Shown: positions 7,086 to 13,301 of the stretch, piece after piece
Numbering within the stretch: the stretch's first letter is position 1
Layout of the letters: the number at the start of each line of letters is the position of its first letter
From: Paramoeba atlantica
Taxonomy: Eukaryota > Protista > Discosea
Assembly (NCBI GenBank): GCA_977017575.1
Contig: CDRNVI010000164.1
Location: forward strand, 248,001-312,000
DNA length: 64,000 nt
Reading direction: 5' to 3'
Notes under the pieces: model-generated
Seen by the model: only the letters and a program-made list of their open reading frames with translations
Told to the model about the DNA's origin: nothing
The model's database searches: none
Made by a program: the position numbers and the translations under genes

Positions 7086-8194
7086 ATGAATGTCAACAAA
7101 CTTCTTGACGCAACTATGAAAATTGCAGGTGCTGGGTTGACAGTTGCTCTTCTTGGAAATCAAGCAACCTTTGTTGTGGAGCCAGGGCACAGCGGCGTTG
7201 TTTTCGATCGTTTCCAGGGAGTGAAAGAAAAGGTGTATGGTGAAGGGCTTCACTTTGTGGTTCCTTTTTTGCAATGGCCAATCATCTATGATACTCGAAT
7301 TACTCCAAGTCTTCATAGAACCGAAACTGCGAGCAAAGATTTGCAGACCATTCGTTTGTTTGTTCGACTTTTGCATCAACCAGTCGTTGAGAAGTTGCCT
7401 TGGATTTTTTCTCAAGTTGGTACTGATTATGCTGAGAGAATCCTTCCTTCTATTGGAAACGAAGTCTTGAAAGGTTGATTTTTTTTTTGATGTGTTCGAA
7501 ATTTTTTTTCTTTGTGTCACCTAATCCTTTTCTCTTTCTCTTTCTCTCAGCTGTTGTCGCTGAATTTGATGCTGATGAATTGGTCACCCAGCGTGAGGCT
7601 GTTTCTTGTGATATTCGCGATCGTTTGATCAAAAGAGCTGAACACTATAACATCATCCTTCGTGATGTTTCAATTACCAAACTCGAATTCAGGTAATATT
7701 TTATTTCTCTCTCATTTCTGTAAACAGAGATTTTCTCTCTCTCTCAGCTTTTTTTTCAAAAACGATCAAAAAAAGAATTTCAACTCACAACTTTTTCTTT
7801 GCACGTACAGTCCTGAATATACTGCTGCTATTGAACGAAAACAAGTTGAACAGCAGATTGCTGAACGTCAGAAATTTATTGTCGAGAAGTCCAAACAAGA
7901 GAAGCTCGCTGCTGTGATTCGAGTTGAAGGAGAGACTGAAGCAGGTCGATTACTCTCTGAAGCAATGAAGATTTCTCCAGAATTTTTAGAACTCCGTACT
8001 CTTTTTTTTTCTTTTTTCTCTCTCTCATCTCTCATTTCTCTCCCCTTGTTCAAACAATTTGATTAAATGAATTTTTTTTCACAACAGGAAAAATTGAGGC
8101 TGCCAAGAAGATTGCTGAATACCTCGCTCGATCACAACGTGTGGTGTACCTTCCCAATAACGGTGGAAACCTTCTTTTGAACATCCCAAATTAA
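7086..8194 (+). CDS. PHB: Prohibitin (SPFH/band 7), 4 exons
   Basis: VEPGHSGVVFDRFQGV, GEGLHFVVP, TASKDLQ, DYAERILPSIGNEVLK, AVVAEFDADELVTQR, AIERKQVEQQIAER, LELRKIEAAK. Confidence 0.95.
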
Positions 8195-9183: not shown

Positions 9184-10912
9184 ATGGTGGCCAGCAAACC
9201 TCTCACACACAATTTTCTCACAGAGCCTGAGCTCATGCGGCTTGGGAAACACAAAGATAAAAAATTTGAAAAGGTAAATTCTGAGTGGCTCTCTCCTCTT
9301 TTTCTCTGGCTTGATCGACTCTTGATTCCGACAAATGTCGCACCTAACGTGTTAAGTTTGGCAGGTAATTTGTTCTTTTTTATTCGATCAATTTTCCTCA
9401 CCAAAACTCCAAAAAAGAGAGAGAAGATGACCCACTCTTTCTCTTTTTTCAATCTTCATTTTCCCTTTTCTTTTCCTTTTGCGATTCTCACATTGTTTTT
9501 TTTTCGTTAGGTCTCCTCTGTGTTGTCCAGGCTTTTTATTGCTGTCAAATGTATTACGATCTTCATTCTTTTGGAATTACAATCCTCTCTGCATTTTTAG
9601 TTTTCATGAACTTTGTTCTTCATCGAATGGACAACTGTCATGCGAAAAATGTTCGAAATGTATCTGTGTTAGGAGACTTGTTCTCAGATGCGTGTGGCAA
9701 CGTTGGAGCAATCTTTAATGCCCTTGTACTTTGTCAAATTACTGGAATCACAGATCTTGATTCATGTTGGTATATTGTCCAAATGCTCCAACTTGGTCTC
9801 CTTCGACATCATGTAAAAGCTTTCAAGGAAGGTTATCTCCATTTTCCCTTTCTCACAGGACCGAATGCCGCTTTTTTCTGGTTTGGAATGATCACCGTTT
9901 TAAATCTCTTTCTGGATGATATTTGGGTTGAATACACTCGAAGTATTCTTCATGTAACTTCCCTTTTGTCTTCTTGTTATTGGGCATTGTTGCTGTTCTC
10001 TGCGATTGAAGCTGCCACACTCCCTTTCAGCAGTCGGAACGGAATTATTTTTTGCTTGGCCTACCGATCTCTCCCCGCTTTGTTGTATTCTTTTGGTCTC
10101 TCTCAGGACGAAAATTATATTGATATTGTTTGTGACGGGTTATTTATGTCGATCCTCACTACCGATATGATTGTTGGACGAAAGGCAGGTCGTGATCTCC
10201 ACCCTTGGATTGTTCTTTTTGCAATGGCTTCCATCGTCAACAACTTTGTCTGTCTTTTCTTGGTGACCTTCTACTTTTTTTCTCTCTTTTACGAAATCTC
10301 TCAACATTTGAACCTCCCGTTATTCACCACTGTGGTCAATGTTTATTGCGATGGGATTTACGATCTTTGTCATCTTGGCCACAAAAATGCTTTTCACAAT
10401 GCTCTCCAATTTGGAAATCGCCTCTTTGTTGGAGTTTGTTCTGATGAAGACGCTTCTGTTTATAAAAGAAAGCCGATTATGAGCACACAAGAGCGGTGTG
10501 AGGCTGTTGCCGCTTGTAAGTGTGTTTATGCTGTGATTCCAGGTGCTCCTTGTCATGGATTGCCCGCTGAATTCATTCAAAAACATAATATCCATATTGT
10601 CGCTCATGGTGAGGTTGGTTTTTTCCTTTGTTTTGTTTTTATTCGGGATGATTGATGGGGGTAGTACAAAAAACCATTTTCTCTGACATTCTTTTTTACC
10701 TTTTCCTCACATTCATTCTCCCTTTTTTTTTTTTCTTTTTCTTCAAAAAAAAGGAATACGAGAAGCCGGGTGACAAATACTATGCTGTTCCTCGGGCAAT
10801 GGGGATCACACGAATTCTCCCACGAACTCACGGACTGTCCACTTCCGAACTAATTCGCCGAGTATGCGAGTACAATGAAGCCAAGCTTCGTGAAGAGGGA
10901 AAATTAGGTTGA
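9184..10912 (+). CDS. Fusion of CEPT/CDP-alcohol phosphotransferase-like membrane domain and HxGH cytidylyltransferase domain, 3 exons
   Basis: N-part PTNVAPNVLSLAG and degenerate CDP-AP motif; C-part VYCDGIYDLCHLGH, LFVGVCSDE, KRKPIMSTQER, RTHGLSTSELIRR. Both domains lie in one uninterrupted exon (9511-10613). Confidence 0.85.
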
Positions 10913-11175
10913 GTCCTCTTCGAAACACCAAAAAAATAAATAAAACTCTCGATCCACTCCTCTCTGAATTTGTGTGAGTTTGTCCACATCCTTCGACTTC
11001 GAAAGATCATATTGTCTGACTTTTTCAGGGAAAAAAAGGAAATAAAATTAACATAATTATTATTTTGGTCTTTCTCAAGTTTGAGTTCAGCAACACAGAC
11101 TTGTCCCTTTTTGGGGGAGGGATTGTGTTAGTTTCTCACACTTTCACGTGTGGGGAGGTTGATGATCACCATTTT

Positions 11176-11658
11176 CTAAAATCTGATCAAATTTTCAACT
11201 ACCCAAGATGGTTTTGAGGGTTTTGAAGAAAAGAAAAGAGTATAGATAATCGGAACTGATGCAACCAAGGATATGAGGAGCACAGCCCCTCCTCGAAGTT
11301 GATAACCATCAGGAGGTTTTTCAGGAGGTGATGAAGAAGGTGGGGCGTTTCTTTTTGCAATTAAATTCGATAAAATAAAATTTTTTGGGAGTGATGAAAC
11401 TCCTTTTGTTATTGGGCAAGGTAATCGGCAATGAGGACAAAGAATTCTGAAAGAAAAGTCAGTGGAAAGAAAAAAGTGAACCAAAAATAAAAAAAGAAAC
11501 ACAAACATTATCGGGGAACCGGCTGACAACTGTTCAAGACACCCCAAACAGAAAGTGTGAAGACAAGGTAATGCTCTTGGATCTTTATATTCTTCACAAC
11601 AAATCGCACATTCAAACTCTTCTTCGAAGTTAGCGTGATTAGGTGAACCTTCAGCCAT
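11176..11658 (-). CDS. Small C3HC4 RING E3 ligase with C-terminal transmembrane helix
   Basis: CAICCEEYKDPRALPCLHTFCLGC...ILCPHCR, LPKNFIL; in-frame intron at about 11447-11506; hydrophobic GGAVLLISLVASVPIIYTLFF near the C-terminus. Confidence 0.8.
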   Translation of the reverse strand: MAEGSPNHANFEEEFECAICCEEYKDPRALPCLHTFCLGCLEQLSAGSPIMFVFLFLFLVHFFLSTDFSFRILCPHCRLPCPITKGVSSLPKNFILSNLIAKRNAPPSSSPPEKPPDGYQLRGGAVLLISLVASVPIIYTLFFSSKPSKPSWVVENLIRF

Positions 11659-12099: not shown

Positions 12100-13113
12100 C
12101 TACCTTTTCTTTCGGAATTTCGTATTTGTGGCACGTTTACTTTTAGGAGAGATTGGAGAGTCATGAATTAGGAATTTCAATTGCTCATAACAACCCCAGA
12201 ACTGATTTACAGCAAAATCATACATTCTTTGATCTCTCTGAAGAAGAGGACTCTTTTCTTTTAACACATTTTCAGTCTCGGTTGCGTTCTGAAGTTCTTG
12301 ACAAGTCAGTTCATTCTTTGTTGCCTGATTTATGTGTCGCAACTTTCGAAATTCTTCTGGAGCACCTTGGAAAAAGTCTGGAAACAGGATTGCTAATAAT
12401 TGAACAGACTTTTCGAATTCTTCTGTGATTCCACAAAAATAATATTCCTGCAAATGTTTCATGGCAATCTCCACTTGCTTTTCTGGTCCTAACCGATGTT
12501 TTACAGCCAAATTGTCCCATTCTGGAACTTTTTCAGTACAACCAGGATCATCTTCTGGTCCACAAAAATAAATATACTCTGAGCGAGGGTGATTGAAACA
12601 TTGTGTCCAGTTTGGGTTCAACACACAGGAAGAGAAAGATTGAGTTCCCCAGTATCGTCGAATGTTTCCTCGAATTCTCTTATCAGGGAGGTAACGAGAG
12701 TAGCAATAGTGACTGGAAATCCTTGAAAATGGTTTTCGTATCACGTTGATGTACGCAATTCGTGTATCTTCAATGTTGGGAAAGTTGAAGTGATTTGAGA
12801 TGACAGCACGTTCTGATCTTTTGAGAGCTTCTGTAATAGCTTTTCGGATGATATCGGGATCGTGGTAAGGTCCTTTCGGTTCGATGTATCGAAATTTGTT
12901 TGCAACAGAAAGCTTCTTGATTAGATAGGACAACGAACTGCTTCCTGTCTTTCCGATTCGATTGTAGATGATTATTTGAGGGTGGTTGTTTGTTGATAAA
13001 CAAATATTTGGAAGTTGGCTAATCAGATTATCGATTGTGGAGTTGAAAGGGGATCCTACCTCTCCTCCAACACTCAGGAAAAGGAGGAAAGAAAAAAAAT
13101 CATGCGAGAACAT
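12100..13113 (-). CDS. Golgi-type sulfotransferase, heparan sulfate 2-O/uronyl 2-O-sulfotransferase-like (start uncertain)
   Basis: 5'-PSB IIYNRIGKTGSSS, 3'-PB YINVIRKPFSRISSHYCY, YYFCGITEEFEKSVQLL; first ATG at 13113 precedes a hydrophobic stretch. Confidence 0.75.
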   Translation of the reverse strand: MFSHDFFSFLLFLSVGGEVGSPFNSTIDNLISQLPNICLSTNNHPQIIIYNRIGKTGSSSLSYLIKKLSVANKFRYIEPKGPYHDPDIIRKAITEALKRSERAVISNHFNFPNIEDTRIAYINVIRKPFSRISSHYCYSRYLPDKRIRGNIRRYWGTQSFSSCVLNPNWTQCFNHPRSEYIYFCGPEDDPGCTEKVPEWDNLAVKHRLGPEKQVEIAMKHLQEYYFCGITEEFEKSVQLLAILFPDFFQGAPEEFRKLRHINQATKNELTCQELQNATETENVLKEKSPLLQRDQRMYDFAVNQFWGCYEQLKFLIHDSPISPKSKRATNTKFRKKR

Positions 13114-13301
13114 CAAACCAAAACCAAAACCTGAAAACAAAAACCGGGCAAGTGAAAGACGAGTAGGATTTTTATTTTTATCTTTTATTATTTTTCGTAC
13201 AATAATATTTTTAAAAATACTCAATACTTTTCATCAAGGGAGCAAGGGTATTCCGTTTCTCTTTCTTTCTTCGCTGTCCCAAGAACACATTTTCTTTTGA
13301 A

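What the first reader, a model, noticed from the sequence alone, without database searches (positions are those of the whole stretch)
9184..10912. Kennedy-pathway fusion in which the phosphotransferase half looks catalytically dead
Seen: a CEPT-like membrane domain and a cytidylyltransferase in one ORF. The CDP-AP signature DxxDGxxAR..GxxxDxxxD reads HRMDNCHAK..GDLFSDACG, so D1, the conserved G, D3 and D4 are replaced. The cytidylyltransferase keeps HLGH and RTHGLSTS. Established: D3 and D4 are needed for metal binding and catalysis, and ECT/CCT catalyse the step just before CEPT. Inference: a pseudoenzyme serving as a membrane anchor, lipid sensor or channelling scaffold for an active cytidylyltransferase. 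The known IPCT/DIPPS fusion has the opposite order and a different nucleotidyltransferase fold.
Basis: partly seen in the sequence, partly recalled or inferred. Interest (0 to 1): 0.7.

Follow-up and report, generated by a model that had tools for sequence, protein, structure and literature searches.

The report
Cytidylyltransferase fused to dead CEPT domain
An amoeba gene joins an apparently working lipid-headgroup-activating enzyme (a CCT/ECT-type cytidylyltransferase) to a ten-helix membrane domain that descends from the next enzyme of the pathway but has lost its catalytic residues; the same fusion runs through many protists and I found no paper describing it.

Summary
Window 9184-10912 (+) is a three-exon gene. 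Spliced contigs from one public run join both introns exactly as modelled.

- **Fusion:** the junction between the CEPT/CHPT-like membrane domain and the cytidylyltransferase (CT) lies inside exon 2, so the fusion is real.
- **Homology:** family profiles hit human CEPT1 (E 1.6e-24 to 3.9e-29) without gaps over the signature motif.
- **Lost residues:** D1 is H, the motif G is N, R is K, D3 is S, the eukaryote-specific catalytic His is D, and D4 is G. Only D2 survives. Published single mutants at these positions cut CEPT1/CHPT1 activity to 20% or less.
- **CT half:** it keeps HxGH, the equivalents of K122, H168 and Y173, and RTxGxSTS.
- **A family, not a one-off:** 108 full-length fusions were compared, from Amoebozoa, cryptophytes, diatoms, a bolidophyte and a red alga. 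Six keep every catalytic residue (for example Bangiopsis). The other 102 are degenerate, most with D3 replaced by Lys.
- **Still constrained:** against a metagenomic orthologue the dead domain shows pN 0.21 against saturated pS 0.79.

The best reading is an active CT held on the membrane by a CEPT-derived pseudoenzyme. Whether that domain is an anchor, a sensor or a scaffold was not tested. Seven literature searches found no description. This is a new variant of a known kind.

The parts
9184..9364 (+). Exon 1: start codon, N-terminal amphipathic region and the start of TM1 with the conserved APN motif (VAPNVLSLAG)
   Evidence: Translation. Intron 1 is joined in an X1 contig, 9362|9509 with cut +2. 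Orthologues P0002 and L001 start at the same place.
9365..9510 (+). Intron 1, 146 nt, GT..AG
   Evidence: sequence; joint that skips 146 bases, GT..AG.
9511..10613 (+). Exon 2: the rest of the CEPT-like membrane domain and the first two thirds of the cytidylyltransferase, in one continuous reading frame
   Evidence: A 1261-nt spliced contig covers 9556-10612. Orthologue L001 aligns without gaps over all 367 codons.
9621..9698 (+). Degenerate CDP-alcohol phosphotransferase signature (HRMDNCHAK...GDLFSDACG): D1 is H, G is N, R is K, D3 is S, catalytic His is D, D4 is G; only D2, A and the second G are kept
   Evidence: Gapless profile alignment to human CEPT1 and Xenopus CHPT1. Motif table of the family. 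Mutant data in PMC10156783 and PMC10182977.
10332..10613 (+). Cytidylyltransferase domain, first part (PF01467), with HLGH at 10371-10382 and the equivalents of CCT K122 and H168
   Evidence: Pfam E 2.5e-15. Alignments to human ECT 3elb and rat CCT 3hl4.
10614..10753 (+). Intron 2, 140 nt, GT..AG
   Evidence: sequence. X1 contig record 2 joins 10612|10753.
10754..10912 (+). Exon 3: the end of the cytidylyltransferase domain (equivalents of CCT Y173 and Y182; RTHGLSTS at 10823-10846), a short C-terminal helix and the stop codon; no CCT-type M-domain amphipathic segment follows
   Evidence: Translation. Profile alignment to CCT and ECT. 84% identity to L001.

Best explanation
**Proposed function.** The gene encodes a membrane-embedded CTP:phospho-base cytidylyltransferase of about 480 residues. 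The C-terminal CCT/ECT-type domain is the working enzyme. It most likely makes CDP-ethanolamine and/or CDP-choline from CTP and the phospho-base.

The N-terminal ten-helix domain descends from a choline/ethanolamine phosphotransferase (CEPT/CHPT). It has lost the di-metal site and the proposed catalytic His, so it no longer performs the canonical transfer of the phospho-base to diacylglycerol. It holds the CT, through a linker of about nine residues, against the cytosolic face of the membrane next to the former active-site funnel. In this it would replace the amphipathic M domain that tethers ordinary CCT.

**Shown here:**
- the gene model and its splicing
- homology of both halves to their families
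- loss of the phosphotransferase residues
- retention of the CT residues
- purifying selection on the dead domain
- the same state across a wide protist family that also contains a few fully intact, presumably bifunctional, members

**Inferred:**
- that the CT is active
- its substrate
- the cytosolic orientation
- that the dead domain acts as tether and dimerising scaffold, possibly also as a sensor of lipid or CDP-alcohol, or as a partner of a canonical CEPT
For: - **Real, spliced fusion.**
- **Membrane half is CEPT/CHPT.**
  - The whole-family profile hits CEPT1 8gyw at E 3.9e-29 over profile positions 12-315.
  - The amoebozoan-only profile gives E 1.6e-24.
  - The AF2 model of orthologue P0002 has pLDDT 90.6 and pTM 0.85, with ten TM helices followed by a CT fold.
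  - Foldseek matches that model to CEPT1 (E 2.4e-9, TM-score 0.60 normalised to the target) and to PfCCT (0.85).
- **Catalytic residues lost.**
  - CEPT1 D136A and D154A nearly abolish activity, and D158A leaves about 15%.
  - In xlCHPT1 every Asp-to-Ala mutant falls below 20%, and E129A and H133A almost abolish activity.
  - Pfam PF01066 hits intact and mildly degenerate members but not P0002 or the window's exons.
- **CT residues kept.** HxGH, K122, H168, Y173, Y182, R196 and T202 equivalents are present. Most are invariant or nearly so in 46 family members.
- **Purifying selection on the dead half.**
  - Window against metagenomic orthologue L001: pN 0.213 against pS 0.786 (saturated) for 273 membrane-domain codons, and pN 0.172 in the motif region.
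  - Membrane-domain identity to Paramoeba aestuarina is 69%.
  - Five members of the window's subclade share the replacement pattern LH..D..H and LFS[D/E].CG.
- **Family context.** 102 of 108 fusions are degenerate and 6 are fully intact.
Against: - No enzyme assay exists for any member, so 'dead' rests on sequence and on mutants of other proteins.
- Three acidic residues remain near the old site: D2, a D at the Glu129 position and a D at the His133 position. An altered mechanism is therefore not excluded.
- The membrane domain is conserved beyond what a plain anchor needs. Many polar residues inside helices are invariant in the family: Q153, Q156, R161, H163, R236, N237, D265, D269, D279, R288 and H291 in P0002 numbering. 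That hints at a retained or new ligand-dependent function.
- The CT lacks the choline-cage Trp151 of CCT. It has a nearly invariant Cys there, so the substrate is uncertain.
- I could not check whether this genome also encodes a canonical CEPT to consume the CDP-alcohol.
Confidence: 0.68

Rival explanations
1. The membrane domain is still an enzyme. It has been rebuilt for a metal-independent or otherwise altered transfer, or for another donor or acceptor, so the protein remains bifunctional.
For: - The domain is under strong purifying selection, the old motif region included.
- Each clade has a conserved replacement motif. D3 is Lys in 74 of 108 members, with D4 kept in 91 of 108. A Lys or Arg in place of a metal ligand could stand in for Mg2+ (inference, not tested).
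- The window's subclade keeps D2 and two other acidic residues nearby.
- Many invariant polar residues lie within the membrane helices.
Against: - The window's clade lacks D1, D3, D4 and the catalytic His together, and has no Lys or Arg replacement at D3.
- Each single loss cripples CEPT1 or xlCHPT1.
- Different clades carry different residues at the same positions: S, A, T, Q, N, G, K or R at D3. That looks like loss of constraint on chemistry rather than one new mechanism.
Confidence: 0.17
2. The dead domain is mainly a heterodimerisation module. It pairs with a canonical, active CEPT through the TM7/TM9 interface seen in CHPT1 dimers, and so delivers the CT product directly to a live phosphotransferase (channelling in trans).
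For: - CEPT1 and CHPT1 are homodimers whose interface is formed by TM7 and TM9.
- The TM7-TM10 half of the fusion is the best conserved part of the membrane domain, and it aligns to the VAHMTKSEMH region of CEPT1.
- Retention of the whole ten-helix fold fits a need for specific packing.
Against: - No canonical CEPT from this genome was available.
- No co-evolution or complex modelling was possible with these tools.
- A single-domain CT of this fold normally needs a homodimer, which favours homodimers of the fusion. This rests on established knowledge of CCT and GCT.
Confidence: 0.1
3. The fusion or its dead site is an artefact: two neighbouring genes wrongly merged, an assembly error, or a decaying pseudogene.
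For: Nothing positive. The idea was considered only because Pfam does not recognise the membrane half.
Against: - The junction lies inside one uninterrupted exon.
- A spliced contig spans it.
- The same architecture and the same exon structure occur in independent metagenome contigs L001 and L004, and in transcriptomes of several amoebae.
- pN is far below pS.
Confidence: 0.02

Closest known systems
Choline/ethanolamine phosphotransferases CEPT1, CHPT1 and yeast Cpt1 (CDP-alcohol phosphotransferase family, PF01066; PDB 8gyw, 8ero, 8ul9, 9uet)
   Same: - Homologous ten-helix membrane domain with the N-terminal amphipathic helices.
- Shared APN motif, motif positions in TM2/TM3, and the conserved TM8-TM9 loop.
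   Different: - D1, D3, D4, the motif Gly and Arg, and the catalytic His are all replaced.
- The Pfam model is not matched.
- A cytidylyltransferase is fused directly behind TM10.
CTP:phosphocholine cytidylyltransferase (CCT/PCYT1; PDB 3hl4, 4mvc) and CTP:phosphoethanolamine cytidylyltransferase (ECT/PCYT2; 3elb)
   Same: - Same fold.
- Same catalytic residues: HxGH, K122, H168, Y173 and RTEGISTS.
- Profile E-values are 8e-35 (CCT) and 6.8e-52 (ECT, two domains). Evidence.
   Different: - A single CT domain, where ECT has a tandem pair.
- No M-domain amphipathic helix and no phosphorylated tail, unlike CCT.
- Trp151 of the choline cage is Cys.
- The RYVD dimer motif reads KCVY.
- It is permanently membrane-tethered by a polytopic domain.
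Archaeal bifunctional IPCT/DIPPS (L-myo-inositol-1-phosphate cytidylyltransferase / CDP-inositol phosphotransferase; NCBIfam NF041135)
   Same: A cytidylyltransferase and a CDP-alcohol phosphotransferase for consecutive steps in one polypeptide.
   Different: - Opposite order, with the transferase domain C-terminal (profile positions 227-359 of 419).
- Six-helix prokaryotic CDP-AP with an intact motif.
- The nucleotidyltransferase is of a different fold (established knowledge, not tested here).
Intact-motif members of the same fusion family (for example Bangiopsis sp. P0104, and metagenomic P0026, P0034, P0042, P0051 and P0093)
   Same: - Same architecture.
- Same CT peculiarities (NVY.DG.YD.CH.GH and APC).
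- Same family in the tree.
   Different: They keep D1, D2, D3, His and D4 and match PF01066, so they may be truly bifunctional. The window's protein keeps only D2.

Membership tests
CDP-alcohol phosphotransferase (CEPT/CHPT type) | Sequence and fold homology of the membrane domain | tested here: met
   - Profile hits to CEPT1: E 3.9e-29 and 1.6e-24.
- Foldseek on the orthologue model: probability 1.00, TM-score 0.60 normalised to the target.
- Ten TM helices in the AF2 model.
CDP-alcohol phosphotransferase (CEPT/CHPT type) | Signature D1xxD2GxxAR...GxxxD3xxxD4 (di-metal and CDP site) | tested here: not met
   The window reads H-x-x-D-N-x-x-A-K ... G-x-x-x-S-x-x-x-G. Only D2, A and the second G remain.
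CDP-alcohol phosphotransferase (CEPT/CHPT type) | Eukaryote-specific catalytic Glu/His pair (xlCHPT1 E129/H133) | tested here: not met
   Glu is replaced by Asp, a conservative change. His is replaced by Asp.
CDP-alcohol phosphotransferase (CEPT/CHPT type) | Pfam PF01066 at gathering score | tested here: not met
   No hit for the window's exons or for orthologue P0002. Relatives P0104, P0026, P0024 and P0006 do hit.
CDP-alcohol phosphotransferase (CEPT/CHPT type) | Phosphotransferase activity (CMP release with CDP-alcohol plus DAG) | not testable with these tools
   Needs an enzyme assay or yeast cpt1 ept1 complementation.
CCT/ECT-type cytidylyltransferase (PF01467) | Pfam domain and fold | tested here: met
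   - PF01467: E 2.5e-15 for exon 2 and 5.8e-18 over the full profile length in P0002.
- Foldseek to CCT, PfCCT and ECT.
CCT/ECT-type cytidylyltransferase (PF01467) | Catalytic motifs HxGH and RTEGISTS, plus Lys122, His168 and Tyr173 of CCT | tested here: met
   HLGH, RTHGLSTS, YK(R), AHG and EEY align to these positions. Most are invariant or nearly so in the family.
CCT/ECT-type cytidylyltransferase (PF01467) | Choline-cage Trp151 (CCT) or tandem CT domains (ECT), the features that assign the substrate | tested here: not met
   Cys stands at the Trp151 position. There is only one CT domain. The family scores about equally with CCT and with the ECT N-terminal domain, so the substrate is left open.
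CCT/ECT-type cytidylyltransferase (PF01467) | Amphipathic membrane-sensing M domain after the catalytic domain (CCT) | tested here: not met
   The protein ends about 20 residues after the RTHGLSTS helix. The AF2 model shows only one short terminal helix.
IPCT/DIPPS-type bifunctional enzyme | N-terminal cytidylyltransferase followed by a C-terminal, motif-intact CDP-AP domain | tested here: not met
   The order is reversed here. NF041135 aligns only to the N-terminal membrane part of relative P0026, at profile positions 227-359 of 419. The motif is degenerate in the window.

The most novel reading that the evidence does not exclude
The fusion family began as a single-polypeptide, two-step Kennedy-pathway enzyme: a CT plus a CEPT, a form still intact in a red alga and a few uncultured lineages. 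In most lineages, including this amoeba, the phosphotransferase was converted into a conserved pseudoenzyme. Its former CDP-alcohol/diacylglycerol pocket now serves as a built-in membrane-lipid or product sensor that gates the attached CT. That would be a polytopic functional counterpart of the CCT M domain, and the first pseudoenzyme described in the CDP-alcohol phosphotransferase superfamily.
Probability: 0.25. Interest if true: 0.75.

Novelty: new variant of a known kind. Interest (0 to 1): 0.6.

Why it matters
- **Regulation of CCT.** How cells match phospholipid head-group activation to membrane demand is a central question in lipid biology. In animals and fungi, CCT senses membranes through a reversible amphipathic helix. 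Here, and in diatoms, cryptophytes and other protists, the cytidylyltransferase is welded to a ten-helix relic of the next enzyme. That implies a different solution to the same problem.
- **A natural experiment.** The family holds both motif-intact and motif-dead members. A bifunctional, possibly channelling, enzyme can be compared with its pseudoenzyme descendants.
- **Annotation.** Automatic names such as 'ethanolamine-phosphate cytidylyltransferase' or 'cytidyltransferase-like' hide the membrane half. Pathway reconstructions for diatoms and amoebae may therefore miscount both CTs and CEPTs.
- **Literature.** No paper in the searchable library describes the fusion or a pseudoenzyme in the CDP-alcohol phosphotransferase family.

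Tried and rejected
- **Single-sequence searches of the membrane half.** phmmer of exon 2 against PDB sequences found only CT hits, and Pfam found no PF01066. Homology needed family profiles.
- **Artefact or merged genes.** Rejected. The junction is inside one exon, a spliced contig spans it, and independent orthologous loci have the same structure.
- **Decaying relic.** Rejected, because pN is far below pS in the dead domain.
- **Many independent losses of the active site.** The tree cannot show this. Parsimony needs only 2 changes for intact versus degenerate and 4 at D3, because the intact lineages sit on an unresolved node and the tree is unrooted. I therefore claim only that the replacement residues differ between clades.
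- **Substrate assignment (choline or ethanolamine).** Inconclusive. CCT and the ECT N-terminal domain score alike. NCBIfam gives only generic cytidylyltransferase models.
- **Literature.** Seven full-text searches found no description of the fusion or of a CDP-AP pseudoenzyme.
- **Earlier notes of this scan.** Word searches found nothing on lipid enzymes in this genome.
  - The joined three-exon protein was not searched or folded. Exons were searched by reference, and the full-length orthologue P0002 served as proxy.
  - I did not look for a canonical CEPT, CCT or ECT in the same genome. Only this window is readable.
Full report
**1. What is in the sequence**

The region lies in an AT-rich eukaryotic window (GC 0.23-0.42). 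The ORF list and the raw sequence give a three-exon gene on the + strand:

| Feature | Coordinates | Note |
|---|---|---|
| Exon 1 | 9184-9364 | start codon at 9184 |
| Intron 1 | 9365-9510 | GT..AG |
| Exon 2 | 9511-10613 | holds the domain junction |
| Intron 2 | 10614-10753 | GT..AG |
| Exon 3 | 10754-10912 | stop included |

One public run (X1) is kept as contigs and labelled RNA only as a guess. It carries two informative contigs:
- one joins 9362|9509, equivalent to my intron 1 after the stated 2-base shift;
- a 1261-nt contig joins 10612|10753, which is my intron 2, and runs from 9556 to 10956.

Because these contigs are spliced at GT..AG borders, they derive from RNA. They show that the message contains both halves. 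The junction between the membrane domain and the cytidylyltransferase (about 10332) lies inside the uninterrupted exon-2 frame. The fusion is therefore not an annotation artefact.

I did not search or fold the joined protein. The full-length orthologue P0002 (72% identical over exon 2) served as proxy.

**2. Identity of the two halves**

Pfam sees only PF01467 (cytidylyltransferase-like) in exon 2, at E 2.5e-15.

The word-indexed protein search with exon 2 returned 206 relatives. Nearly all are 457-595 residues long and cover the whole query. Named sources are:
- Paramoeba aestuarina (P0002), Thecamoeba quadrilineata and Clydonella sp., all Amoebozoa of the Discosea;
- the cryptophytes Guillardia theta and Geminigera cryophila;
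- the diatoms Nitzschia inconspicua and Eucampia antarctica;
- the bolidophyte Triparma laevis;
- the red alga Bangiopsis sp.

The window itself most likely comes from a discosean amoeba related to Paramoeba. This is inferred from the nearest relatives only.

A profile of 46 family members hits the following:
- human ECT 3elb at E 6.8e-52;
- rat CCT 3hl4 at E 8.2e-35;
- human CEPT1 8gyw at E 3.9e-29, over profile positions 12-315 against chain 16-320;
- Xenopus and human CHPT1.

A profile of the ten amoebozoan membrane domains alone still hits CEPT1 at E 1.6e-24, and it has no gap across the signature region.

The AlphaFold2 model of P0002 has mean pLDDT 90.6 and pTM 0.85. It shows, in order:
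- two N-terminal amphipathic helices;
- ten membrane helices (residues 55-327), with a short ninth helix as described for CHPT1;
- a linker of about nine residues;
- a Rossmann-type CT fold.

Foldseek matches the model to CEPT1 (E 2.4e-9, TM-score 0.60 normalised to the target), to CHPT1, and to CCT, PfCCT and ECT (up to 0.85).

**3. The phosphotransferase site is gone**

The gapless profile alignments fix the register against CEPT1:

| Position | CEPT1/CHPT1 | Window |
|---|---|---|
| D1 | D | H |
| D2 | D | D (kept) |
| motif G | G | N |
| motif A | A | A (kept) |
| motif R | R | K |
| second G | G | G (kept) |
| Glu129 (xlCHPT1) | E | D |
| D3 | D | S |
| His133 (xlCHPT1) | H | D |
| D4 | D | G |

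The published experiments say the following:
- In human CEPT1, D136A and D154A nearly abolish activity, and D158A leaves about 15% (PMC10156783).
- In Xenopus CHPT1 the four Asp bind two Mg2+ ions, and each Asp-to-Ala mutant falls below 20% (PMC10182977).
- In the same enzyme, E129A and H133A almost abolish activity, and His133 is proposed to activate the diacylglycerol hydroxyl.

The window's protein lacks four of these six residues at once. The shifted Asp in 'SD' sits one position after D3. I do not regard it as a substitute, because D4, D1 and the His are also missing. Still, three acidic residues stay near the old site, so an altered chemistry cannot be excluded by sequence alone.

**4. 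The cytidylyltransferase looks intact**

Alignment to rat CCT and human ECT shows these residues in place:
- HLGH at the His89/His92 positions;
- Lys at the Lys122 position (YKRKP);
- His at the His168 position (AHG);
- Tyr at the Tyr173 and Tyr182 positions;
- RTHGLSTS at the Arg196-Thr202 positions.

Most of these are invariant or nearly so in 46 family members.

The differences from CCT and ECT are:
- Trp151 of the CCT choline cage is a nearly invariant Cys;
- the RYVD motif reads KCVY;
- there is only one CT domain;
- nothing resembling the CCT M domain follows it.

CCT and the ECT N-terminal domain score alike, so the phospho-base substrate is left open.

**5. A family-wide state, with intact exceptions**

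I tabulated the motif in 108 full-length fusions, the window included.
- Six keep D1, D2, D3, His and D4. These are Bangiopsis P0104 and a clade of five uncultured sequences, and they match PF01066.
- The other 102 are degenerate.
- D3 is Lys in 74 and Asp in 9.
- The His is Tyr in 81.
- D4 is kept in 91.

All eleven rows of the amoebozoan clade lack D3, His and D4. The window's subclade has also lost D1 and the motif Gly.

The quick maximum-likelihood tree is unrooted, and the intact lineages sit on an unresolved node. Parsimony therefore needs only 2 changes for intact versus degenerate, and 4 at D3. I do not claim many independent losses. I claim only that different clades carry different replacements.

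The ESM Atlas look-up adds a diatom-rich cluster of 100 members. It also gives, as a lead only (score 0.78), a 590-residue rotifer cluster carrying both Pfam domains.

**6. The dead domain is under constraint**

Two metagenome contigs carry orthologues: L001 from JGI and L004 from TARA. Both have the same exon layout and the same replacement pattern, LH..D..H and LFS[D/E].CG.

Nei-Gojobori counts for the window against L001 are:

| Region | Codons | pN | pS |
|---|---|---|---|
| Membrane domain | 273 | 0.213 | 0.786 (saturated) |
| Motif region | 50 | 0.172 | 0.751 (saturated) |
| CT domain | 94 | 0.091 | 0.704 |

Identity to P. aestuarina is 69% in the membrane domain and 82% in the CT. Many polar residues inside the helices are invariant across the family. 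The domain is therefore not drifting. It is kept for something more specific than hydrophobic anchoring.

**7. How it most likely works**

- **Shown:** a spliced message that encodes a CEPT-derived ten-helix domain without the catalytic set, followed after about nine residues by a CT with its catalytic set.
- **Inferred from the CEPT1/CHPT1 topology** (both termini and the active-site funnel on the cytosolic side; abstract): the CT sits on the cytosolic face, beside the former funnel.
- **Inferred from CCT/GCT biology and the CHPT1 homodimer**: the membrane domain probably dimerises and so brings two CT domains together.
- **Best reading (confidence 0.68):** the protein is a permanently membrane-bound phospho-base cytidylyltransferase whose tether is a pseudo-phosphotransferase. 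The CDP-alcohol it makes would be used by a separate, canonical CEPT.
- **Open:** whether the old pocket still binds CDP-alcohol or diacylglycerol and regulates the CT, or pairs with a live CEPT.
- **Main rival (0.17):** the domain has become an altered enzyme.

**8. Comparison with what is known, and novelty**

It works like a CCT/ECT and is a member of PF01467. It is a homologue of the CDP-alcohol phosphotransferases, but it fails their defining motif test.

The archaeal IPCT/DIPPS fusion joins analogous steps, but in the opposite order and with an intact six-helix transferase.

Seven full-text searches found no paper on this fusion or on a pseudoenzyme in the CDP-AP family. Databases name the relatives only 'cytidyltransferase-like' or 'ethanolamine-phosphate cytidylyltransferase'.

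I class it as a new variant of a known kind, of moderate to high interest. 

Noticed in passing
window 12100-13224 (-): A 374-residue ORF with a weak Pfam Sulfotransfer_2 match (E 6.4e-5), directly downstream of the fusion gene on the other strand. This is a carbohydrate-type sulfotransferase family in what appears to be an amoeba.
   Followed up: partly
window 11176-11658 (-): An ORF with an N-terminal C3HC4 RING finger (E 1.8e-8) followed by hydrophobic stretches. It is probably an exon of a membrane-bound E3 ligase and may relate to the TRIM-type genes that other notes report in this window.
   Followed up: partly
window 7860-8000 (+), inside ORF 7662-8066: By eye, the translation contains a stretch that looks like the C-terminal part of a prohibitin/SPFH protein. 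Pfam gave no hit on the whole ORF, so it is probably a single exon of a spliced gene.
   Followed up: partly
P0003 / P0121 (MMETSP1310, labelled Chloroparvula japonica RCC2339): This 'green alga' transcript is 65% identical to the window's exon 2, and it groups with strong support with the window and Paramoeba inside the amoebozoan clade. This suggests an amoebozoan contaminant in that transcriptome.
   Followed up: no
ESM Atlas cluster: A 590-residue cluster of 60 members, commonest in Rotifera, carries both PF01467 and PF01066 (95% of members). The fusion may therefore also exist in animals known for gene uptake. The score is only 0.78, so this is a lead.
   Followed up: no
L001 3667-4185 (-) and L004 4850-6322 (-): In both metagenomic orthologous loci, the gene downstream of the fusion on the opposite strand encodes a Vps5/PX sorting-nexin-like protein. 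The window has different neighbours (RING, sulfotransferase), so synteny is shared between those two loci but not with the window.
   Followed up: no
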